64,000 bases of DNA, from contig NW_005434648.1 of the NCBI RefSeq assembly GCF_000315625.1, positions 410,974-474,973 of the forward strand, read 5' to 3'. The translations under genes and the position numbers were made by a program. Of the stretch, positions 7,279 through 40,059 are shown piece by piece (position 1 is the stretch's first letter; each line of letters opens with the position of its first letter). The notes under the pieces are model-generated. The model saw only the letters and a program-made list of their open reading frames with translations. It searched no databases and was not told the origin of the DNA. Source of the DNA: Guillardia theta CCMP2712 (Eukaryota; Protista; Cryptophyta).

Positions 7279-7714
7279 ATTGAAGGGGAGCTCGGTCATT
7301 ATCAAAAGCTGATATACCATGATAGGACAGGGAGGCGGAAAGGGAGGAGAACTTGTAATTTTATGTAGTTGTATTTGTTCAGCAAGCTAGCAGGTAGGGT
7401 GGAGACTACTGAGGGAGAAATTGATAGAAATCAGGACATACAAGCGCGAGTGATTAGAGACATGTATTCGGTAAATAGAGGAACGATACCCTAAACCACT
7501 TGCTCTATCGTTGAATGGAGATGTTGTGGAGGGAGCAGCCGTGGAAACAGTGAAAAGAAGTTGCACGTCTTGTCAAGTCAGTGCAAACCAAGTTTCTCTC
7601 TTGCATTCACATCTTTATGGTAAAATCAGACCTCAACAGTCTATATCGATTAAGATTCCACCCGGCCCCTAACAATCACCGCCAACAACGTGGCCGCTAT
7701 CACCATCACGTTCT

Positions 7715-10700
7715 TTCATATCAAGTCAACATCTCAGAGTCTTGTACTTCCACATCGACATCTTCCTTCTTGGTCACCTTGGCCTGTACGTAGATGCGAG
7801 CAGCCTTGAGCTTCTTGTAAAATCGCGGATTCTCAATCTGAAGCGCGACGGGCTCGTCGGGGAAGGTGGAGGTGAGTTTTGAGATGTCGAGGTAAGCAGT
7901 GCCGATGAGGTCGTCTTTGGTTATCTATGAACAGCTGAGAAAGAGGAGAAAACGAGAGAAAGGAGCGAAAGGGGGAGGGCAGGGCAGGGCAGGGCAGGGC
8001 AGGGCAGGGCAGGGCAGGGCAGGGCAGGGCAGGGCAGGGCAGGGCAGGGCAGGGCAGGGCAGGGCAGGGCAGGGCAGGGCAGGGAAGAAGAAAAAGGATA
8101 GAGTAAGGAAAGGAAAGAAATGAAGATAGCACAGAGAGAGAAGAAAGTGTAGGTAGGAGCTGAAAAGAGGAAAGTCCTTCGGGGAAGAAAAGAACATAAA
8201 GAGGATGAAGATGAACAGAAGTCACGTTGGATATCACGGCAGATGATTATGATGAGTTAGAGGTAGTGGAAAGGGGGATCGGGGTTGGGGGGGGGGGAGG
8301 GCGGGGGAAGGAGAGATGGAGGAGAAAGAGGAGAACGGGGAGGAGGATGAGGAGGAGGAGGATGAGCAGCAGCAGCAGCAGCAGCAGCTCGACTCACATT
8401 GTCCTTATCCCACACGGAGATAGTGACTATGGTGCTGTTGCTGTACACCTTCCACTCGAACGCCTCGTCCCACGTCGGGTTGACCTGCTTCCTGATGATC
8501 TTGCTCATGTACGAGTCCCTGCTGCCCTCCCCGTCCAGAAAGAGGATGCAGTACGGGTCGCAGCTCCTTACGAGATCCATCCTGGGGAGATGCTCTGCCC
8601 GGACGAGCCGGAGGGTTAGAGTCCCTAGAGCACCTGCTCCTCTACCCTGATCCTCCTCCTCCTCCTCCTCCTGGATGGTGACCGAGCTCTTCTGCGCTAT
8701 CCCCTCCATCACTTGCACGATCCTCTTCTGCTGAGCCACCAGCTGATTCTGCAGCGCGTTCATGGAGAGAAGCCGCCTGCATGAGGAGTTATGTGATACC
8801 CCTTCCTCCTCCTTCTCTACCTCCTCCACCTCCTCTATCTCCCCCTATACCCGCTTCATCGCCTTCGCTCCTAGTTCTCCCCCGTCCCCCGTCCTTCTTC
8901 CTTCACCACCTCTTCGTTCTCTACATCTTCCTCTTCCATCCCTACCTTCCTCTTCTTCTCCACCTTCCCTCCTCACCCTCCTTCCCTCCTCACCTCATGT
9001 TCTCTATCTCGAGGATGAGCTTGAAGTCCTGGTTCTTCCTATCCTGCAACTCGGACAGGTCTTCCCCGTAACGATCCAGCAAGTTGTGAATCGCCTCGCT
9101 GTCCTCCATCCCCCCGACCTCTTCCCCATCCTCCTGCCCCTCAGCCTGCCCTTCCACAGGATGCACCCTTGGTCCTCCCGTCTTCCCCAGGAACAGCTCG
9201 AGATCCTGGTAGTCGACTTTGATTCCTCCTCGGATCAGGATGGCGCGCTGGTAGGCCATGCGCTTGCTGATGTCGAGCTTCACCTTGTGCATCTGCTGCA
9301 TCCTCTCCTTCTCCTCCAGCAGCCTCTGCTTCAGCCTTTGGTTTGAGATGAAGGAGCTCCCGGGCAGCACCAGCCGCTTCACCTCGTGCGCTACCACAGA
9401 GGAGAAGTCGCTGATGAGGCCGGTGGAGCCGTCGGTGTGGCTCTTGACGTTGGCGTACGCGTCGACGAGGATGGCGAGGAAGATGTTAAAGAGGATGAAG
9501 AAGACGATGAAGAGGTAGGACCAGAGAAAGATGTGGAAGGCCGCAAAGTCCGAAGCATGCGACATCTGCGAGAGGAGCAGGTCAGGGAGGAGGACGGGAA
9601 GGGGAAGATCTTACGGAGGAGAAGAACTGAGTCGTGTCGAAGTTGAGGAGGAATATGGTGAGGGTGATGCAGGAGCTCGAAAGGTTCTTCATGCCCTGCA
9701 CCATGCTCGTCAGCTATCGCAGGGAGGGGAGGAGGGGAGGGAGGGGAGCGGGATAGCAGGGGAGAGGAGAGGGTGAGGAGAGGGAGAGCAGTGTCGGAGA
9801 GAGTCAGAGAGGGGAGGAAGAGGAGGCGACAGACCTCAAACTGATGACCGAAGAGCAGGACGCCGACGATGGCGTAGCCCATGAAGACGATGAGGAAGAG
9901 GAGGATGAAGTGCCAGAGATCGCTCGCAGCGTTAGAGATCGTCCTTGTCACCATCCCCATCCTCTCCTGGAAGTCGAGGGACTTGAGCATTCTGAGCACG
10001 AAGAGGACGACGCTGACCCCCGCGAAGAAGGAGAACACCTGCATCGTGCTGGAGATGCGCTGCATGGTGTGGATCAGGCTCAGGAAGTCGAACTCTGCCT
10101 GGTTGTTGGTTCGAAACATCCTCGCGCTCGCTGGTTTCGTAGCCGAGAGCGGAGCCTCGAAGGTCCTCGCTGCCCCGTACCTCCTCGACGTGCTGTTGTC
10201 GTACTTGGGTCCGTAGAAGAGGATGGGATAGTTGGGGAGGAGGGTCAAGCCCTGCACCTCAGCTCTGTGCACGAACCAGGTGACGACAGTTCCCCACATG
10301 AAGACAAAGTGAAGGAGGTCAACCCAGTTGAACAGGTCGGCGAAGTACTCGTGGAGGGCAAACTTCCTAGCCTGCACCATGATGTCCATGATTTCCAGTA
10401 TGCAGTTGATAGCGAGGAAGAGGATCACGAGGAGCATCAGGACGGCCTGAACGACGCTGGGGTAGAGGATGCGGTCGAAGGAGATGGTCTTGATATTGTA
10501 GTTCCAAGGGATCTTCCCGCTGGTCTCCCACTTGAACGAGATGTCGAGGTAGAGGAAGAGGTTCTTCACAGCGTTGAACGTCACCACCTCCACGTGCAGC
10601 TCTTGCGTCTGAGCGTCAAGGAACTTCCCGTCCTTGGCAAACGCCACCATGGCCTGCGCCTGCTTCTGCGTCAGCCGCTCGTCGAAGAAGAGCTTGAAGC

Positions 10701-13700
10701 TGTTTCTGTCCTCCCCATGAACAACCTTCGCATCCTTCTCATGCACCGTCTCGTAGCTCTTGTCCATCGCCAGCTCCTCTAGCGACAGGGTCCCGTCCAG
10801 GTTCGCGTCCAGCCAGTTGGCGTCGTACTCGTGAGGAAAGAAGCCCTTGGGGAAGGAGAGGGTGGAGGAGCCGTCGGTGCCGTTGACCGCGTGCCGTTCG
10901 CTGGGCCCGTAGAACATCTCGGGCCGGAGCTTCCCGTTGTAGATGGAGCTGAAGGGCATGAAAGTCGCGTCGTAGCCGAAGGGCTTCGGGTCAAACTGCT
11001 GCTCCGAGGGGCACAGGACTCCCTCCTTGGCGGACTGAGTGAAGGCCTTCACGTCAGGCTTCTGGATGCCCTGGGAGCAATCTTCTCCCTTCCTCCTCCT
11101 CTGCGAGATCACGATCCCTCCCACCATCCGGTTGTACGGCGTCAGCTCTCGCACCTTGGGCTGGAACTGGGGGATGACGGTGGGGGTCTTGCCACGGGCG
11201 TTGAACTTCCAGACCTCGAACTCGTGGTTGTCCTTGCAGTTCGTGTCCAAGTAGGACAAGATCTTGCTGGCGTCGATGCACTCCGGGTAGCCTCCTGACC
11301 CAGGGCACTTGTCTTGCGGGCAGTGACCGGTGTAAGAGTCCCTGCTGTCTACGATGCAGAACGAGCACTCGAGACAAACTCCAAAGTCATACCCGGCATC
11401 AGGGACTCGGTAGCAGAAGGCTGAGTCCGGACAGTCGTAGTGGGTCACACAAGCCTCGTAGAAGCCAGACGTCTGCAGCTGAGAGGAGATGGAGGAGGAC
11501 CGCAGGGAGAGGCTGGTGTGAGGGAAGGCAGCGGGGTAGCCGGTGAGGAGGGAAGCGAGCGCGGCCTTGAAGCTCGTGTCGACCGCCACCACCTCAAGGT
11601 TGGAGGACGTGAAGACTTTGACCGTGACGTCAGCGACGGAGAGGCTAGAGGCGTCAGCCGACTGGGACAAGACAGCCGAGCCGAGGGCTATCCTGCTCTT
11701 GTCCTCGTTGAGAGCCGTCGAGAGAGCAGACTGGAGCCAAGTGAAGCTCGCGTTAGCGTCGAAGGTCTGGTTGTTGAGCTCCACCACGCGGAAGGTCGCG
11801 GAGAGAAAGGGAGGAGGGAAGACGCAGATATGAAAGGGAGTGCCCATGGCACTCGGCAGAGTCCCCGAGCAGGCGATGGCGAGGACGGAGACATCGGTAC
11901 CTTCGACATCGGCGGTCTCAAGGAACACATTCGCGTACGTCGGGTTGGAGTAGAAGGGCCCGGTAGTGCAACTTGGCTGCATCAGGCAGACGTTCTGACT
12001 GTCGCACAGCGTGACTACGTAGGCGATCTTGGCGCTGGTGGTAGTGGACTTGATCTCAAAGTCCACGAAGAAGTTCTCTCCGTCGCAGGAGGTTGTCACA
12101 GTCTGGTCGACCAGCTTCACCGTCGCTGCTGTTGGTCTCGTCGGACATGCCTGCCCCCCCCAAGTCGCGCAGATGGAAGCGAGCGAGTCAGGGAGGATGA
12201 CTTGCACGCGAGCTCGCCACGAAGGGATGGAGATCGTAGGCGTCGGCTCTCCCGGCCGGGCACCGTTGCAGACGGTCACGTCAGAGGACGAGCACTCTGT
12301 GCTGCAGGCGTCGTCAGTGCAGGCACAGGCCGTGATGCCGTAGGAGCAGGTGGAGGATGAGGGCGGGCCCAGGTTGACGACGCCGACGGTGAAGGTGAGG
12401 TTGTTCTGATAGTTGGCTAGCGACACGATGTAGCAGGCCTCAGTCCCTTGGCTCCCTATGCTGTAAACATATCCAGCGTCCTGATCAGCAATCTCAGTGC
12501 AGCTTGAGCTCCTGAGCGCTACTTGTCTCTTCGTCTGCCTCTGCTTCGGTCGGAAAGCTCTTAGTGACTTGCTGCGTGACTGCAGCGTCGGAAAGCGTGA
12601 CTTCACCGTTGGGGAGAGCTCCTTCAGCCCGACATCCTTCTGCCTCGAATGTGCGGAAGTCATCGAGCCCTCGTACTTTCTTCTCATCTTCTCTGCTTGC
12701 TCGGAGTGATGCTCCCACAGGACAACCTGTTGTTGTCTGGCTCTCCTTGATACCTTCGCAGGGCAGGTTGTTTCAGCCTGTCCGAAGAAGGCCATGTTTT
12801 CAGCAGAGTCGATCCCTCCTGTTCTGTTGGGGACCGACGTGCAGAACAAAACCTGGATGGAGCGTCAAGGTGAGTTTGACCTTCCGACTCAACGATTACC
12901 TCAGCAACTGTGTCGAAAGAGTTTGTAGATGTCTTGCTCGTAATACTCCCATTCAAGCCATAGCTTGCCATGACTCGGAAAAGCACATCTTCAAACAGGA
13001 CAGCAAAGATCAGTCATCGTCGTCGAAGTGAAGATCTTTCGAAAGAATACCTGGAATGTTTAGGTTTGAACACTTCGGATCCAGGAACATGGCCTCTGAA
13101 GAGAAGCAGTAATCTATGATTCCTGATAGCAACAAATATGATGCAGTGATGAACTCCTTCTTGTCGCCATAAGAGAAATCGTTCAAACTGTTCCGCTCTG
13201 GGATTGTGCTGAAAGCAAAACAAGCATCAGTCAAACTCATCAAGAAACACACATCAATTCCGTTCAACACCTCGGAACAATCCCAAGGTCTTTAAGAGCT
13301 GCGTTGTCCACAAGCTCGCTGGTCTTGACCGTCTGATAAAGCACAAGGTTGAACTTGCCGTCAGGCACGTCCACGACAAGCTTCGAATCATTTCTATCGG
13401 TCTCGAACAAGAAGTTTCCCATGGTCTGACTGTAGATGTTGTACTTGAACCCGCCCTTCCTCGCATCCTGAATCATGCTCTGAGTCGAAAGATCCCAGTT
13501 GAGGCTCTTGGCACTTGTTTGCACCACGTCTTCCAGGTTGATAGAGAGCGATGTCACATTCAAGTAATTCCCACAGTCGATGATGCAGCCAAACCGACCA
13601 AACCCAGGGTATTCATCCGGACTATCACACTTGCCGTCCCCACAGACAGGATCGTTGAACACTTGTTTGATCAGAGCGTCGTTCAACCAGGTGTAAAATT

Positions 13701-14160
13701 CGTCCACGTTGCTGAGAAAGCCGTTGGCACCAACACCCGAGTTCGTGTACCCACCTGATCCTGTGGTCGGCAGCTTACCAACAATCAGGTTCATGACCGA
13801 GCTCTCAATCGCGTAGCAGGCTTCGTAGTCTCGCTGCATGAACAACAGCACGATGTACAAGATGAAGAACGTCGTCGTGCCCATCAACTTCTTGTATGAG
13901 TCTGACCTGTTGATTTTCGCTTCTGCCATCTCTATCAAACCATCCACCATGAACTCTTTTGATGTCTCAGGATCCTTTTCAGAAGGGTTGAAAAGGATTT
14001 TCGACTCGATGTCTTCAAGGACATCTTGAATGGCTAGAACTCGTTCTTGGAAGACCCTCTTGTCCTCTACCAGCAAGGGCTCGTCTTGCCTCTCGTTGAT
14101 CCCTGCCCTTTGCCGTCTGTTCCTAACTGCAGCGATCAACCCCCCGGAAGGGAGGGGCAT
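7715..14160 (-). CDS. Polycystin-2/TRPP-like cation channel with large extracellular insert and C-terminal C2 domain (copy A)
   Basis: S1 LMGTTTFFILYIVLLF; TOP-domain motifs FYTWL and KFLDAQTQELHVEVVTFN; S2-S6 incl. DLFNWVD, VLRMLKSLDF, GYAIVGVLLFG, ILFNIFLAILVDAY; C2 LVRAEHLPRMD..SCDPYC...NPTWDE.FEW..VWDKD. Confidence 0.9.
7976..8080. repeat. (AGGGC)21 microsatellite in the last intron of polycystin copy A
   Basis: Perfect pentamer tandem repeat. Confidence 0.95.
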
Positions 14161-33342: not shown

Positions 33343-33727
33343 AGTGTTTATCACTTGCACAGGCTCCTTGATAGCGCCGGACTCCGGGAGTCCGGGCCGA
33401 ACCCCCCGGCCCCGGGCCCGCCGGTGACCCGGACTCCGGTCCGACACTTGAGTCACCGACCTCACCGACCTAGTTTTGGAAAAAAAATTAGCCGGGTGAG
33501 TTAACTTTGACAAGGGGGTAGTAGGGCAGGTAGTAACCGGTGGAGCGAACTAAAAACCCTTACAGAAAGTTAACTGAGGGCAGAGAGGCGCCGAGATGGA
33601 GGGATGCCGGACGGTGATCATGGTGTAATCAGGAAGCAACCAGCGAGGATGGGGAGTTTCACGGAAGATGTAAGAAGAAAGACAAGGATTCCTGATATCT
33701 CATTGTTCGGTTCAGCATAACTGGTGT

Positions 33728-36700
33728 ATGGCCCTTCCTTCCGGGGGGTTGATCGCTGCGGTTAGGAACAGACGGCGAAGGGAAGAAATCGATGAATGGC
33801 AAGATGAGCCCTTGCTGGTAGAGGACAAGAGGGTCTTCCGAGAACGAGTTCTGGCCATCCAAGATGTCCTTGAAGATATCGAGTCGAAAATCCTTTTCAA
33901 CCCCTCTGAAAAGGATCCTGAGACATCAAAAGAGTTCATGGTGGATGGTTTGATAGAGATGGCAGAAGCGAAAATCAACAGGTCAGACTCATACAAGAAG
34001 TTGATGGGCACGACGACGTTCTTCATCTTGTACATCGTGCTGTTGTTCATGCAGCGAGACTACGAAGCCTGCTACGCGATTGAGAGCTCGGTCATGAACC
34101 TGATTGTTGGTAAGCTGCCAACAACAGGATCAGGTGGGTACACGAACTCGGGTGTTGGTGCCAACGGCTTTCTCAGCAACGTGGACGAATTTTACACCTG
34201 GTTGAACGACGCTCTGATCAAACAAGTGTTCAACGATCCTGTCTGTGGGGACGGCAAGTGTGATAGTCCGGATGAATACCCTGGGTTTGGTCGGTTTGGC
34301 TGCATCATCGACTGTGGGAATTACTTGAATGTGACATCGCTCTCTATCAACCTGGAAGACGTGGTGCAAACAAGTGCCAAGAGCCTCAACTGGGATCTTT
34401 CGACTCAGAGCATGATTCAGGATGCGAGGAAGGGCGGGTTCAAGTACAACATCTACAGTCAGACCATGGGAAACTTCTTGTTCGAGACCGATAGAAATGA
34501 TTCGAAGCTTGTCGTGGACGTGCCTGACGGCAAGTTCAACCTTGTGCTTTATCAGACGGTCAAGACCAGCGAGCTTGTGGACAACACAGCTCTTAAAGAC
34601 CTTGGGATTGTTCCGAGGTGTTGAACGGAATTGATGTGTGTTTCTTGATGAGTTTGACTGATGCTTGTTTTGCTTTCAGCACAGTCCCAAAGCGGAACAG
34701 TTCGAACGATTTCTCTTATGGCGACAAGAAGGAGTTCATCACTGCATCATATTTGTTGCTATCAGGAATCATAGATTACTGCTTCTCTTCAGAGGCCATG
34801 TTCCTGGATCCGAAGTGTTCAAACCTAAACATTCCAGGTATTCTTTCGAATGATCTTCACTTCGACGACGATGACTGATCTTTGCTGTCCTGTTTGAAGA
34901 TGTGCTTTTCCGAGTCATGGCAAGCTATGGCTTGAATGGGAGTATTACGAGCAAGACATCTACAAACTCTTTCGACACAGTTGCTGAGGTAATCGTTGAG
35001 TCGGAAGGTCAAACTCACCTTGACGCTCCTTCCAGGTTTTGTTCTGCATGTCGGTCCCCAACAGAACAGGAGGGATCGACTCTGCTGAAAACATGGCCTT
35101 CTTCGGACAGGCTGAAACAACCTGCCCTGCGAAGGTATCAAGGAGAGCCAGACAACAACAGGTTGTCCTGTGGGAGCATCACTCCGAGCAAGCAGAGAAG
35201 ATGAGAAGAAAGTACGAGGGCTCGATGACTTCCGCACATTCGAGGCAGAAGGATGTCGGGCTGAAGGAGCTCTCCCCAACGGTGAAGTCACGCTTTCCGA
35301 CGCTGCAGTCACGCAGCAAGTCACTACGAGCTTTCCGACCGAAGCAGAGGCAGACGAAGAGACAAGTAGCGCTCAGGAGCTCAAGCTGCACTGAGATTGC
35401 TGATCAGGACGCTGGATATGTTTACAGCATAGGGAGCCAAGGGACTGAGGCCTGCTACATCGTGTCGCTTGCCAACTATCAGAACAACCTCACCTTCACC
35501 GCCGGCGTCGTCAACCTGGGTCCGCCCTCATCCTCTACCTGCTCCTACGGCATCACGGCCTGTGCCTGCACTGACGACGCCTGCAGCACAGAGTGCTCGT
35601 CCTCTCACGTGACCGTCTGCAACGGTGCCCGGCCGGGAGAGCCGACGCCTACGATCTCCATCCCTTCGTGGCGAGCTCGCGTGCAAGTCATCCTCCCTGA
35701 CTCGCTCGCTTCCATCTGCGCGACTTGGGGGGGCCAGGCGTGTCCGACGAGACCAACAGCAGCGACGGTGAAGCTGGTCGACCAGACTGTGACAACCTCC
35801 TGCGACGGAGAGAACTTCTTCGTGGACTTTGAGATCAAGTCCACTACCACCAGCGCCAAGATCGCCTACGTAGTCACGCTGTGCGACAGTCAGAACGTCT
35901 GCCTGATGCAGCCAAGTTGCACTACCGGGCCCTTCTACTCCAACCCGACGTACGCGAATGTGTTCCTTGAGACCGCCGATGTCGAAGGTACCGATGTCTC
36001 CGTCCTCGCCATCGCCTGCTCGGGGACTCTGCCGAGTGCCATGGGCACTCCCTTCCATATCTGCGTCTTCCCTCCTCCCTTTCTCTCCGCGACCTTCCGC
36101 GTGGTGGAGCTCAACAACCAGACCTTTGACGCGAGCGCGAGCTTCACTTGGCTCCAGTCTGCTCTCTCGACGGCTCTCAACGAGGACAAGAGCAGGATAG
36201 CCCTCGGCTCGGCTGTCTTGTCCCAGTCGGCTAACGCCTCTAGCCTCTCCGTCGCTGACGTCACGGTCAAAGTCTTCACGTCCTCCAACCTTGAGGTGGT
36301 GGTGGTCGACACGAGCTTCAAGGCCGCGCTCGCTTCCCTCCTCACCGGCTACCCCGCTGCCTTCCCTCACACCAGCCTCTCCCTGCGGTCCTCCTCCATC
36401 TCCTCTCAGCTGCAGACGTCTGGCTTCTACGAGGCTTGTGTGACCCACTACGACTGTCCGGACTCAGCCTTCTGCTACCGAGTCCCTGATGCCGGGTATG
36501 ACTTTGGAGTTTGTCTCGAGTGCTCGTTCTGCATCGTAGACAGCAGGGACTCTTACACCGGTCACTGCCCGCAAGACAAGTGCCCTGGGTCAGGAGGCTA
36601 CCCGGAGTGCATCGACGCCAGCAAGATCTTGTCCTACTTGGACACGAACTGCAAGGACAACCACGAGTTCGAGGTCTGGAAGTTCAACGCCCGTGGCAAG

Positions 36701-39700
36701 ACCCCCACCGTCATCCCCCAGTTCCAGCCCAAGGTGCGAGAGCTGACGCCGTACAACCGGATGGTGGGAGGGATCGTGATCTCGCAGAGGAGGAGGAAGG
36801 GAGAAGATTGCTCCCAGGGCATCCAGAAGCCTGACGTGAAGGCCTTCACTCAGTCCGCCAAGGAGGGAGTCCTGTGCCCCTCGGAGCAGCAGTTTGACTC
36901 GAAGCCCTTCGGCTACGACGCGACTTTCATGCCCTTCAGCTCCATCTACAACGGAAAGCTCCGGCCCGAGATGTTCTACGGGCCCAGCGAACGGCACGCG
37001 GTCAACGGCACCGACGGCTCCTCCACCCTCTCCTTCCCCAAGGGCTTCTTTCCTCACGAGTACGACGCCAACTGGCTGGACGCGAACCTGGACGGGACCC
37101 TGTCGCTAGAGGAGCTGGCGATGGACAAGAGCTACGAGACGGTGCATGAGAAGGATGCGAAGGTTGTTCATGGGGAGGACAGAAACAGCTTCAAGCTCTT
37201 CTTCGACGAGCGGCTGACGCAGAAGCAGGCGCAGGCCATGGTGGCGTTTGCCAAGGACGGGAAGTTCCTTGACGCTCAGACGCAAGAGCTGCACGTGGAG
37301 GTGGTGACGTTCAACGCTGTGAAGAACATCTTCCTCTACCTCGACATCTCGTTCAAGTGGGAGACCAGCGGGAAGATCCCTTGGAACTACAACATCAAGA
37401 CCATCTCCTTCGACCGCATCCTCTACCCAAGCGTCGTTCAGGCCGTCCTGATGCTCCTCGTGATCCTCTTCCTCGCTATCAACTGCATACTGGAAATCAT
37501 GGACATCATGGTGCAGGCTAGGAAGTTTGCCCTCCACGAGTACTTCGCCGACCTGTTCAACTGGGTTGACCTCCTTCACTTTGTCTTCATGTGGGGAACT
37601 GTCGTCACCTGGTTCGTGCACAGAGCTGAGGTGCAGGGCCTGACCCTCCTCCCCAACTATCCCATCCTCTTCTACGGACCCAACTACGACAACAGCACGT
37701 CGAGGAGGTACGGGGCAGCGAGGACCTTCGAGGCTCCGCTCTCGGCTACGAAACCAGCGAGCGCGAGGATGTTTCGAACCAACAACCAGGCAGAGTTCGA
37801 CTTCCTGAGCCTGATCCACACCATGCAGCGCATCTCCAGCACGATGCAGGTGTTCTCCTTCTTCGCGGGGGTCAGCGTCGTCCTCTTCGTACTCAGAATG
37901 CTCAAGTCCCTCGACTTCCAGGAGAGGATGGGGATGGTGACAAGGACGATCTCTAACGCTGCGAGCGATCTCTGGCACTTCATCCTCCTCTTCCTCATCG
38001 TCTTCATGGGCTACGCCATCGTCGGCGTCCTGCTCTTCGGTCATCAGTTTGAGGTCTGTCGCCTCCTCTTCCTCCCCTCTCTGACTCTCCCCGACACTGC
38101 TCTCCCTCTCCTCACCCTCTCCTCTCCCCTGCTATCCCGCTCCCCTCCCTCCCCTCCTCCCCTCCCTGCTCATGCTGACGAGCATGGTGCAGGGCATGAA
38201 GAACCTTTCGAGCTCCTGCATCACCCTGGCCATCTTCATCCTCAACTTCGACACGTTTTATTTCTTCTCCTCCGTAAGATCTTCCCCTTCCCGTCCTCCT
38301 CCCTGACCTGCTCCTCTCGCAGATGTCGCATGCTTCGGACTTTGCGGCCTTCCACATCTTTCTCTGGTCCTACCTCTTCATCGTCTTCTTCATCCTCTTC
38401 AACATCTTCCTCGCCATCCTCGTCGACGCGTACGCCAACGTCAAGAGCCACACCGACGGCTCCACCGGCCTCATCAGCGACTTCTCCTCTGTGGTAGCGC
38501 ACGAGGTGAAGCGGCTGGTGCTGCCCGGGAGCTCCTTCATCTCAAACCAGAGGCTGAAGCAGAGGCTGCTGGAGGAGAAGGAGAGGATGCAGCAGATGCA
38601 CAAGGTGAAGCTCGACATCAGCAAGCGCATGGCCTACCAGCGCGCCATCCTGATCCGAGGAGGAATCAAAGTCGACTACCAGGATCTCGAGCTGTTCCTG
38701 GGGAGGACGGGAGGAGCAAGGGCGCATCCTGTGGAAGAGCAGGCTGAGGGGCAGGAGGATGGAGAAGAGGTCGGGGGGGTGGAGGACAGCGAGGCGATTC
38801 ACAACTTGCTGGATCGTTACGGGGAAGACCTGTCCGAGTTGCAGGATAGGAAGAACCAGGACTTCAAGCTCATCCTCGAGATAGAGAACATGAGGTGAGG
38901 AGGGAAGGAGGGTGAGGAGGGAAGTTGGAGAAGAGGAGGAAGGTAGAGAAGCAGGAGGAAGATGTAGAGAGAGAAGAGGTGGTGAAGGAAGAAGGAGGGG
39001 GAACGGGGGAGAACTAGGAGCGAAGGCGATGGAGCGGGTATAGGGGGAGATAGAAGAGGTGGAGGAGGTAGAGAAGGAGGAGGAGGGGGTATCACATAAC
39101 TCCTCATGCAGGCGACTTCTCTCCATGAACGCGCTGCAGAATCAGCTGGTGGCTCAGCAGAAGAGGATCGTGCAAGTGATGGAGGGGATAGCGCAGAAGA
39201 GCTCGGTCACCATCCAGGAGGAGGAGGAGGAGGAGGATCAGGGTAGAGGAGCAGGTGCTCTAGGGACTCTAACCCTCCGGCTCGTCCGGGCAGAGCATCT
39301 CCCCAGGATGGATCTCCTAAGAAGCTGCGACCCGTACTGCATCCTCTTTCTGGACGGGGAGGGCAGCAGGGACTCGTACATGAGCAAGATCATCAGGAAG
39401 CAGGTCAACCCGACGTGGGACGAGACGTTCGAGTGGAAGGTGTACAGCAACAGCACCACAGTCATCATCTCCGTGTGGGACAAGGACAATGTGAGTCGAG
39501 CTGCTGCTGCTGCTGCTGCTCATCCTCCTCCTCCTTCTCCTTCTCACCCCTCCCCTCCCCCCGACCCCCCTTTACATTACCTCTAACTCATCATAATCAT
39601 CTGCCGTGATATCCAACGTGACTTCTGTTCATCTTCAGCTCTATCCTTTTTCTACTGCCCTGCCCTGCCCTGCCCTGCCCTGCCCTGCCCTGCCCTGCCC

Positions 39701-39999
39701 TGCCCTGCCCTGCCCTGCCCTGCCCTGCCCTGCCCTGCCCTGCTCCTCTCGCTCCTTTCTCTCGTTTTCTCCTCTTTCTCAGCTGTTCATAGATAACCAA
39801 AGACGACCTCATCGGCACTGCTTACCTCGACATCTCAAAACTTACCTCCACCTTCCCCGACGAGCCCGTCGCGCTTCAGATTGAGAATCCGCGATTTTAC
39901 AAGAAGCTCAAGGCTGCTCGCATCTACGTACAGGCCAAGGTGACCAAGAAGGAAGATGTCGATGTGAAAGTACAACACTTGGATGTCGACTTGATATGA
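33728..39999 (+). CDS. Polycystin-2/TRPP-like cation channel with C-terminal C2 domain (copy B)
   Basis: Same exons and motifs as copy A; introns at e.g. 34618-34679; pore exon 38193-38273. Confidence 0.9.
39656..39740. repeat. (TGCCC)17 microsatellite in the last intron of polycystin copy B
   Basis: Counterpart of the 21-unit tract in copy A. Confidence 0.95.
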
Positions 40000-40059
40000 A
40001 AGAACGTGATGTTGATAGCGGCAATCGATCAGTTTGTTTATGAAGAGCAACAAGGATCG

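What the first reader, a model, noticed from the sequence alone, without database searches (positions are those of the whole stretch)
38193..38273. The twin TRPP channels differ most densely in the pore-loop exon
Seen: the 81-nt exon between S5 and S6 reads GMKNLSSSCITLAIFILNFDTFYFFSS in copy B and GMKNLSSSCITLTIFLLNFDTTQFFSS in copy A (9615-9695). That is 8 nucleotide and 4 amino-acid differences within 12 codons, whereas the flanking S2-S5 and S6 segments are essentially identical in protein. Known: this segment is the pore helix and selectivity filter of PKD2 (FRIILGD), here replaced by LNFD. Inference: selection keeps two pore variants despite homogenisation, giving channels or heterotetramers with different selectivity or gating.
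Basis: partly seen in the sequence, partly recalled or inferred. Interest (0 to 1): 0.8.

Follow-up and report, generated by a model that had tools for sequence, protein, structure and literature searches.

The report
Twin algal channel genes, different pores
Two near-identical, head-to-head polycystin-type ion-channel genes of the alga Guillardia theta are kept alike by copying between them, yet a 92-base patch at the ion-selecting pore of one copy has stayed different, a pattern that fits selection for two pore types but does not prove it.

Summary
Copy B (plus strand, pore exon 38193-38273) and copy A (minus strand, 9615-9695) differ at 8 nt and 4 aa within 12 codons. S2-S5 differs by 1 aa and S6 by none. 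The genes are GUITHDRAFT_106834 (A) and GUITHDRAFT_106840 (B) of Guillardia theta, polycystin-2-like channels with a C-terminal C2 domain.

The exon maps to pore helix 1, the filter Asp and pore helix 2. The FY/TQ difference lies 2 and 3 residues after the invariant Asp. The +2 position corresponds to PKD2L1 D525, a known Ca2+-permeation determinant.

Copy B is the derived one. Sixteen other paralogs and the Hanusia phi orthologue carry the A-type state.

A Guillardia relative about 2% diverged (ENA metagenome contig) already has the B-type patch. Outside the patch, A and B are closer to each other (0.8%) than either is to that relative (2.2%). So the flanks were homogenised after the patch arose.

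This supports "two pore variants persist despite homogenisation". Selection, expression of both copies and any difference in selectivity remain inferred.

Caveats:
- The first 81 nt of the coding sequence are denser still (12 differences).
- If adjacent changes are counted as single events, the clustering is only marginal.

A second head-to-head pair (contig C231) also has a homogenised S2-S5 region and a divergent pore.

The parts
33728..39990 (+). Copy B gene (GUITHDRAFT_106840, protein P0022, 1780 aa): polycystin-2-like channel with a giant S1-S2 ectodomain and a C-terminal C2 domain
   Evidence: Exon blocks from tblastn of paralog models; Pfam PKD_channel, Ion_trans and C2; public model retrieved by id and compared with A
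7724..14160 (-). Copy A gene (GUITHDRAFT_106834, protein P0013, 1779 aa), the head-to-head twin of B, 19.5 kb away
   Evidence: P0013 matches 14160-13273 and 7924-7724 at 100%; inverted repeat
38193..38273 (+). Pore exon of copy B (27 codons): pore helix 1, the N-F-D loop, pore helix 2. Derived residues are A1398, I1401, F1407 and Y1408
9615..9695 (-). Pore exon of copy A, with the ancestral-type residues T, L, T, Q
38170..38261 (+). Divergence patch in B: 12 of 92 nt differ from A. The nearest other differences are at 38090 and 38400. Its counterpart in A is 9627-9718
38170..38173 (+). 4-nt block substitution in the intron (B tcat, A gata) just upstream of a CTGAC branch-point-like motif. The B type is shared by the relative M
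33728..33904 (+). Divergent 5' edge of the repeat (17 differences, 7 aa in the first 38 codons). Homology stops at the start codon and the promoters are unrelated
37391..38053 (+). S2-S5 coding segment, homogenised (1 aa difference)
38323..38893 (+). Exon for S6 and the proximal C-terminus; the S6 part is identical in protein
39113..39499 (+). C2-domain exon
36127..36135 (+). Second small cluster (3 differences in 9 nt, N746S) whose B-type state is also shared by the relative M

Best explanation
A and B are duplicated, divergently oriented polycystin-2-like channel genes that evolve in concert through gene conversion between the inverted arms. Before the reference strain split from a relative about 2% diverged, copy B acquired a remodelled pore loop. 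The changes are T>A and L>I in pore helix 1, and T>F and Q>Y in the first turn of pore helix 2, at positions +2 and +3 after the invariant filter Asp. Later conversion homogenised the sequence on both sides, to within about 80-140 nt, but never erased the patch. I consider the most likely reason to be that conversions covering the patch are removed by selection, because the cell benefits from having two pore types. Those types would act either as separate homotetramers under unrelated promoters or as A/B heteromers whose remaining interfaces are kept identical by conversion. Shown: the anatomy, the polarity of the changes, the concerted evolution, and the age of the patch relative to its flanks. 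Inferred: selection, expression of both copies, and a functional difference between the pores.
For: Mapping: HMMER aligns the paralog's pore exon to the pore helix and LGD region of PKD2L1 and PKD2. The AF2 model of P0022:1093-1483 gives S5, helix 298-311, loop F312-D313, helix 314-321 and S6. Its best structural matches are PKD2 and PKD2L1. D313 is invariant in 17 family members. Polarity: 15 of 16 other G. theta paralogs have T-Q after the Asp. Thr at +2 is present in 18 of 19 other family proteins. Codon inference from the Hanusia phi read-through transcript is compatible with A at 8 of 8 differing sites and incompatible with B at 7 of 8. Concerted evolution with an old patch: in exon 4, dAB=0.0078, dAM=0.0215 and dBM=0.0233. 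In the patch, dAB=12, dAM=11 and dBM=1. At 38266-38700, dAB=2, dAM=10 and dBM=8 (Fisher p=5e-6). The relative also has an orthologue of copy A with A's unique upstream flank, so the duplication predates the split. Copy B is not decaying: of its lineage-specific changes in exon 4, 5 are nonsynonymous and 8 synonymous (omega 0.19, p=0.003 against neutrality), and all exons are open. The B-type pore protein is identical in the relative. Functional relevance of the site: in PKD2L1, D525N (+2 after D523) lowers Ca2+ permeability 9-fold and changes Ca2+ block, and swapping pore helix 1, filter and pore helix 2 transfers permeability (PMC6056229). Recurrence: the C231 head-to-head pair has a 1582-nt tract at 99% identity that ends at the S5 exon end, with the pore exon at 58% nt identity. 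Other close paralog pairs show no excess divergence in the pore exon.
Against: The nonsynonymous-to-synonymous ratio in the exon (6:2) is not significantly above the gene background (30:33; p=0.14). The four sub-clusters look like multi-nucleotide events. One is a neutral-looking intron block, which suggests a mutational burst rather than stepwise adaptive substitution. With events collapsed, the clustering is marginal. A dense mismatch patch can itself hinder conversion without any selection. No copy-specific expression data were obtained; only 4 RNA reads were laid. An A-type pore was not directly recovered from the relative; there is only a half-depth hint in X6. The T>F change at an almost invariant position could equally mark a crippled pore.
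Confidence: 0.5

Rival explanations
1. Neutral relic. One or a few complex mutational events (error-prone repair synthesis or multi-nucleotide substitutions) hit copy B shortly after duplication. The resulting 13%-mismatch patch then survived by chance, or because dense mismatches terminate or reject heteroduplex, with no benefit from two pore types. B may be a slightly impaired or equivalent channel.
For: The differences fall into tight blocks (4 nt in the intron; 2+1+1 and 4 within 6 nt in the exon), and with events collapsed p is about 0.06-0.12. The intron block is unlikely to be selected. The dN/dS contrast is not significant. Another tiny shared cluster exists at 36127-36135. In the C231 pair the tract ends where intron homology ends, which is a mechanical boundary.
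Against: The patch sits in the 1.5% of the coding sequence that forms the selectivity filter, and it replaces a near-invariant Thr. Both flanks were converted after it arose, with tract ends within about 80 and 140 nt. The B-type pore protein is unchanged in a relative about 2% diverged, and the rest of B is under purifying selection.
Confidence: 0.3
2. Imported patch. The B-type 92 nt were copied in by a short ectopic conversion from a third, diverged paralog or a foreign haplotype.
For: This would explain, in one step, a block of clustered differences that includes intron positions.
Against: The pore exon has no DNA match in the 87-Mb genome other than A and B. None of the 16 other paralogs, nor any of 19 family proteins, carries F-Y. 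Scans with B-specific k-mers found no template in the window.
Confidence: 0.07
3. Young duplication without conversion. The copies are simply recent, and the pore cluster is a recent burst in B.
For: Overall identity is 98.3%, and the interior introns are nearly identical.
Against: The relative has both an A-flanked copy and the B-type patch, so the duplication and the patch predate a 2.2% split, while the interior A-B divergence is only 0.8%. Neutral divergence is strongly heterogeneous, with pS 0.005 to 0.064 between segments and 9% at the 5' edge.
Confidence: 0.05
4. Assembly or sequencing artefact.
For: Near-identical inverted repeats are prone to mis-assembly.
Against: The B-type contig is exact in X1, the A-type contig is in X5 from another study, and the B type is in X6 and in ENA contig L032. 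The A-specific upstream flank is seen in an X1 contig and in L033. Both 5'-edge variants appear at about half depth each in X5.
Confidence: 0.02

Closest known systems
Polycystin-2 / PKD2L1 (TRPP) cation channels
   Same: There is a Pfam PKD_channel hit (47.5 bits). The layout is S5, pore helix 1, filter Asp, pore helix 2, S6. The best structural matches are PKD2 and PKD2L1. The differing +2 position corresponds to PKD2L1 D525, which tunes Ca2+ permeation (PMC6056229).
   Different: The filter reads L-N-F-D (family consensus L-S-L-D-T-T-Q-F-Y) instead of L-G-D. The S1-S2 ectodomain is about 1000 residues. A C2 domain follows the channel. The family has expanded to at least 18 genes in G. theta.
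Divergence islands maintained against interlocus gene conversion (for example RHD/RHCE; the models of Innan 2003 and Teshima & Innan 2008). Cited from my own knowledge, not checked here
   Same: The paralogs are more alike than the orthologues. There is a sharp peak of divergence at functional residues inside homogenised flanks, and the peak is older than the flanks.
   Different: Here the island is only about 92 nt, lies in an ion-channel selectivity filter, and all of its changes are on one copy. Selection is inferred, not measured.
Arm-to-arm conversion in inverted repeats or palindromes (for example Y-chromosome palindromes; PMC3403216 appeared, not read)
   Same: The arms are inverted with a unique spacer, identity is very high in the interior, and identity decays at the arm edges.
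   Different: The arms are 6.3 kb and hold a single gene each. Homology ends exactly at the start codon, so each copy has its own promoter.
Heteromeric polycystin complexes with an asymmetric pore (PKD1/PKD2, PKD1L3/PKD2L1; PDB 6a70 and 7d7e)
   Same: They show the idea that subunits with different pore loops can share one tetramer.
   Different: In those complexes the partners are very different proteins. Here the partners would be 97.7% identical and differ mainly in the pore. Co-assembly has not been tested.

Membership tests
TRPP / polycystin-2-like channel (Pfam PF08016) | Sequence match to PKD_channel above Pfam's gathering score | tested here: met
   47.5 bits against a cutoff of 22.4 on the S3-S5 part of exon 4. 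phmmer E-values of 4e-16 to 1e-12 to PKD2L1 and PKD2 chains for the paralog P0003
TRPP / polycystin-2-like channel (Pfam PF08016) | Fold: S5, pore helix 1, filter loop, pore helix 2, S6, preceded by a beta-rich ectodomain before S2 | tested here: met
   AF2 model with pLDDT 71 and helices at 250-288, 298-311, 314-321 and 327-365. Foldseek top hits are PKD2 and PKD2L1, probability 1.00, TM about 0.58
TRPP / polycystin-2-like channel (Pfam PF08016) | L-G-D selectivity-filter motif | tested here: not met
   The motif is L-N-F-D in A and B and L-S-L-D in most paralogs; only the Asp is conserved. The alignment register to LGD is uncertain by one residue in HMMER. The gap-free register puts Asp on Asp
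TRPP / polycystin-2-like channel (Pfam PF08016) | Cation conductance | not testable with these tools
   Requires electrophysiology
Concerted evolution with a protected divergence island | Paralogs within a genome are closer to each other than to orthologues in a relative | tested here: met
   dAB 0.0078 against dAM 0.0215 and dBM 0.0233 over 2700 nt
Concerted evolution with a protected divergence island | The island is older than the flanks (shared with the relative) | tested here: met
   L032 carries 11 of 12 B-type patch states, and X6 carries 7 of 8 exon states
Concerted evolution with a protected divergence island | Both variants are retained in the relative | tested here: inconclusive
   The relative has an A-flanked copy (L033) and a B-type pore (L032). 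Its A-type pore was not recovered. The X6 pore contig has about half the depth of its flanks (9.3 against 17-18)
Concerted evolution with a protected divergence island | Selection on the island (excess replacement, or a functional difference) | tested here: inconclusive
   Replacement density is high (P=1e-5 as sites, 8e-4 as codons), but the nonsynonymous-to-synonymous ratio against background gives p=0.14

The most novel reading that the evidence does not exclude
Head-to-head twin polycystin genes in Guillardia may be a design for obligate heteromeric channels. Gene conversion would keep the ectodomain, voltage-sensor-like domain and assembly surfaces of the two subunits identical, while selection holds their pore loops apart and so produces an asymmetric selectivity filter. 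The second pair on C231, with a 99% identical tract ending at S5 and a divergent pore in which one partner also departs from the T-Q motif, would be an older instance of the same arrangement.
Probability: 0.2. Interest if true: 0.75.

Novelty: new variant of a known kind. Interest (0 to 1): 0.55.

Why it matters
If selection is confirmed, this would be a compact natural experiment on ion-channel pores. The two proteins are 97.7% identical, and apart from the cytoplasmic N- and C-terminal ends their differences are concentrated in the pore exon: four residues around the selectivity filter, including the position that tunes Ca2+ permeation in PKD2L1. Nature has done the pore swap, and conversion has held the background constant. 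It also gives a clear, datable example of a divergence island surviving concerted evolution. And it points to an uncharacterised family of polycystin-C2 channels in cryptophytes, with at least 18 members. If the patch is a neutral relic, the case is an ordinary pair of converting duplicates with a mutational cluster.

Tried and rejected
1. Donor paralog for the patch. A whole-genome DNA search with the pore exon found only A and B, and no paralog has F-Y. I rejected this.
2. Local template switching. B-specific k-mers have no convincing template in the window. Only a common codon-usage 11-mer recurs, and the intron block merely lengthens a 2-bp hairpin stem to 5 bp (reading). This is unsupported.
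3. JGI metagenome scans with two pore-exon patterns both returned nothing.
4. Copy-specific expression. The one RNA run with raw reads laid only 4 reads on 5.8 kb, which is uninformative.
5. Recovering the relative's A-type pore. The 90% cluster holds only P0023 and P0024 from ENA, so it was not found.
6. Literature. I found no paper on Guillardia polycystin twins, and the project PRJEB17505 is not mentioned in the library.
7. Earlier scan notes on polycystins in this genome concern other loci.
Per-exon statistics were computed exon by exon. Full-length proteins were used only as the public models P0013 and P0022, returned by the tools and referenced by id.
9. I did not run the large representative-protein search, because the family was not in question.

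Full report
**What is in the sequence.** The window holds an inverted repeat with arms at 7693-14160 and 33728-40022. It aligns without gaps over 5823 nt, with 98 differences (98.3% identity). Eight differences lie at 38228-38261, spanning 12 codons. Two are synonymous. Six nucleotides make four replacements, written A>B: T>A, L>I, T>F and Q>Y. A 4-nt block at 38170-38173 in the upstream intron also differs. The nearest other differences are at 38090 and 38400, so the patch is 12 differences in 92 nt.

S2-S5 (221 codons) has one replacement and S6 has none. Per exon the pore exon is clearly the most divergent, with pN 0.095 and pS 0.113 against 0.0076 and 0.029 for the rest of the coding sequence. 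However, the first 81 nt of the coding sequence, at the edge of the repeat, hold 12 differences and 7 replacements. Intron 38896-39112 is 6% divergent.

A permutation scan over the interior (33910-38700) gives p<=5e-5 for 12 differences in 92 nt if sites are independent. If differences 3 nt or less apart are collapsed into single events, p is only about 0.06-0.12.

**Identity of the genes.** The genome is Guillardia theta CCMP2712 (names). Copy A is GUITHDRAFT_106834 (P0013, 1779 aa) and copy B is GUITHDRAFT_106840 (P0022, 1780 aa).

Pfam finds PKD_channel, Ion_trans and C2. Homology between the arms stops exactly at the start codon. The genes are head to head, 19.5 kb apart, and have unrelated upstream regions.

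Per-exon statistics were computed exon by exon, and full-length proteins were used only as public models by id.

**Mapping to the pore.** HMMER aligns the equivalent exon of paralog P0003 to the pore-helix and LGD region of PKD2L1 and PKD2, with a register uncertainty of one residue. I built an AlphaFold2 model of P0022:1093-1483 with a 17-sequence family alignment (pLDDT 71). It gives:
- S5 at model positions 250-288
- a helix at 298-311 (pore helix 1)
- a two-residue loop, F312-D313
- a helix at 314-321 (pore helix 2)
- S6 at 327-365

Its best structural matches are PKD2 and PKD2L1. D313 is invariant in the family.

The A/T and I/L differences therefore lie in pore helix 1. F/T and Y/Q are positions +2 and +3 after the filter Asp. 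In PKD2L1 the +2 residue is D525. D525N lowers Ca2+ permeability 9-fold and changes Ca2+ block, and swapping the segment from pore helix 1 through the filter to pore helix 2 transfers permeability between polycystins (PMC6056229).

**Which copy changed.** G. theta has at least 18 paralogs of this channel. In 15 of the 16 others the Asp is followed by x-T-Q-F-Y, and none has F-Y. Thr at +2 is present in 18 of 19 other family proteins, including non-Guillardia ones.

The closest orthologue, from Hanusia phi (P0001, 86% identical), is an intron-retaining transcript that reads the pore exon in a shifted frame. Enumerating its possible codons shows it is compatible with A at all 8 differing sites and incompatible with B at 7 of them. 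The minimum number of differences over the exon is 9 to A and 16 to B. So all the changes are derived in B.

**Age of the patch relative to its flanks.** Two ENA metagenome contigs (project PRJEB17505) come from a relative, M, that is about 2% diverged.
- L033 carries A's unique upstream flank (94% identity) and mostly A-type states at the 5' edge.
- L032 covers the end of exon 4, the pore, S6 and the C2 exon. It carries the B-type state at 11 of the 12 patch sites, including the intron block. Only the synonymous site 38228 is A-like.

The distances are as follows:

| Segment | dAB | dAM | dBM |
|---|---|---|---|
| Exon 4 (2700 nt) | 0.0078 | 0.0215 | 0.0233 |
| 38266-38700 | 2 | 10 | 8 |
| Patch | 12 | 11 | 1 |

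The contrast between the patch and exon 4 gives Fisher p=5e-6.

Outside the patch, M matches A at some differing sites and B at others, interleaved. That is what is expected if those differences arose after a homogenisation event more recent than the split. Since the A type is ancestral (Hanusia and the paralogs) and M has the B type, both pore types must predate the split. The duplication is therefore older than the split, the flanks were converted afterwards, and the patch survived.

**Read support.** X1 (2011) has an exact B-type contig at 37912-38406, and a copy-A contig whose loose end matches A's unique flank. X5 (2021, another study) has an A-type contig over the pore, and both 5'-edge variants at about half depth each. 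X6 (a 2023 metagenome) has a B-type pore with 38228=C, like M, at 9.3x depth against 17-18x in its flanks. That hints at a second pore variant there. Logan contigs pop bubbles, so the absence of the other branch in a run means nothing. The RNA run X11 laid only 4 reads, so expression is unresolved.

**Selection or not.** Copy B is not decaying. Using M to polarise changes, its lineage-specific changes in exon 4 are 5 nonsynonymous to 8 synonymous (omega 0.19; p=0.003 against neutrality). This is similar to A, with 3 to 5. All exons are open in both copies. The B-type pore protein is identical in M.

The density of replacements in the pore exon is far above background (P=1e-5 as sites, 8e-4 as codons). 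The nonsynonymous-to-synonymous ratio, 6:2 against 30:33, is not significantly different (p=0.14).

The block-like form of the changes (ACT CAG > TTT TAT, and gata > tcat in the intron) points to multi-nucleotide mutational events as the origin. A dense mismatch patch may also resist conversion mechanically. I therefore put the selection-maintained reading at about 0.5 and a neutral relic at about 0.3.

I largely reject three other readings: a donor paralog, a young unconverted duplication and an artefact.

**A second pair.** On contig C231, GUITHDRAFT_121487 and GUITHDRAFT_121488 are head to head, with start codons about 1 kb apart. They share a 1582-nt tract at 99.05% identity that ends 4 nt past the S5 exon. 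Their pore exons are 58% identical in nucleotides and their S6 segments 63%. One partner is the only paralog with S-T-L instead of T-T-Q. Other recently duplicated members (the C91, C209, C162 and C189 group) show no excess divergence in the pore exon. This recurrence is suggestive. But in C231 the whole 3' part of the gene is diverged, and the tract may simply stop where intron homology stops.

**Verdict.** The causal claim (selection for two channel types or for heteromers) is plausible, matches the classical signature of a divergence island under gene conversion, and is testable, but it is not demonstrated.

Noticed in passing
G000:C231:21875-32621 (loci L036, L035): A second head-to-head polycystin-C2 pair (GUITHDRAFT_121487 and GUITHDRAFT_121488), with start codons about 1 kb apart. 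It has a 1582-nt tract at 99.05% identity covering the ectodomain end through S5 and stopping at the S5 exon end. The pore exon and S6 are only about 60% identical.
   Followed up: partly
window 36127-36135: Three A/B differences lie within 9 nt in the ectodomain exon (including N746S). Their B-type state is also present in the related strain's contig L032, making this a second small old island.
   Followed up: partly
window 38085-38161 versus L032: The CT-rich intron between S5 and the pore exon is 77 nt shorter in the related strain, but has the same length in copies A and B of the reference. This is consistent with homogenisation of the intron after the split.
   Followed up: no
proteins P0001 and P0002 (Hanusia phi, EukProt): Both Hanusia orthologue models end by reading through the donor site after S5 into the intron. 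The source transcripts therefore retain this intron, and the models are truncated before the pore.
   Followed up: partly
window 39230-39290 (C2 exon); P0013 and P0022 near residue 1640: The public models of A and B splice out about 17 codons (G-R-G-A-G-A-L-G-T-L-T-L-R-L-V-R-A). These align with the first C2 strand of the paralogs, so this is probably a spurious annotated intron.
   Followed up: no
window 33664-33708 and L033:644-689: A 46-nt stretch upstream of copy B's start codon is 91% identical to the region upstream of the copy-A orthologue in the related strain. Otherwise the two upstream regions are unrelated. It may be a shared 5' element.
   Followed up: no
G000:C91:163483-166515 (loci L026, L031): Two convergently oriented family members have identical S5 and pore segments and a 99% identical S6 segment. 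One appears truncated after S6. Four members of this subfamily lie on C91.
   Followed up: no
proteins P0014, P0015, P0016: Some G. theta members of this channel family carry extra ectodomain modules in the precomputed Pfam list (CUB, PF00431; PF07699). The family's giant S1-S2 loop is therefore modular.
   Followed up: no
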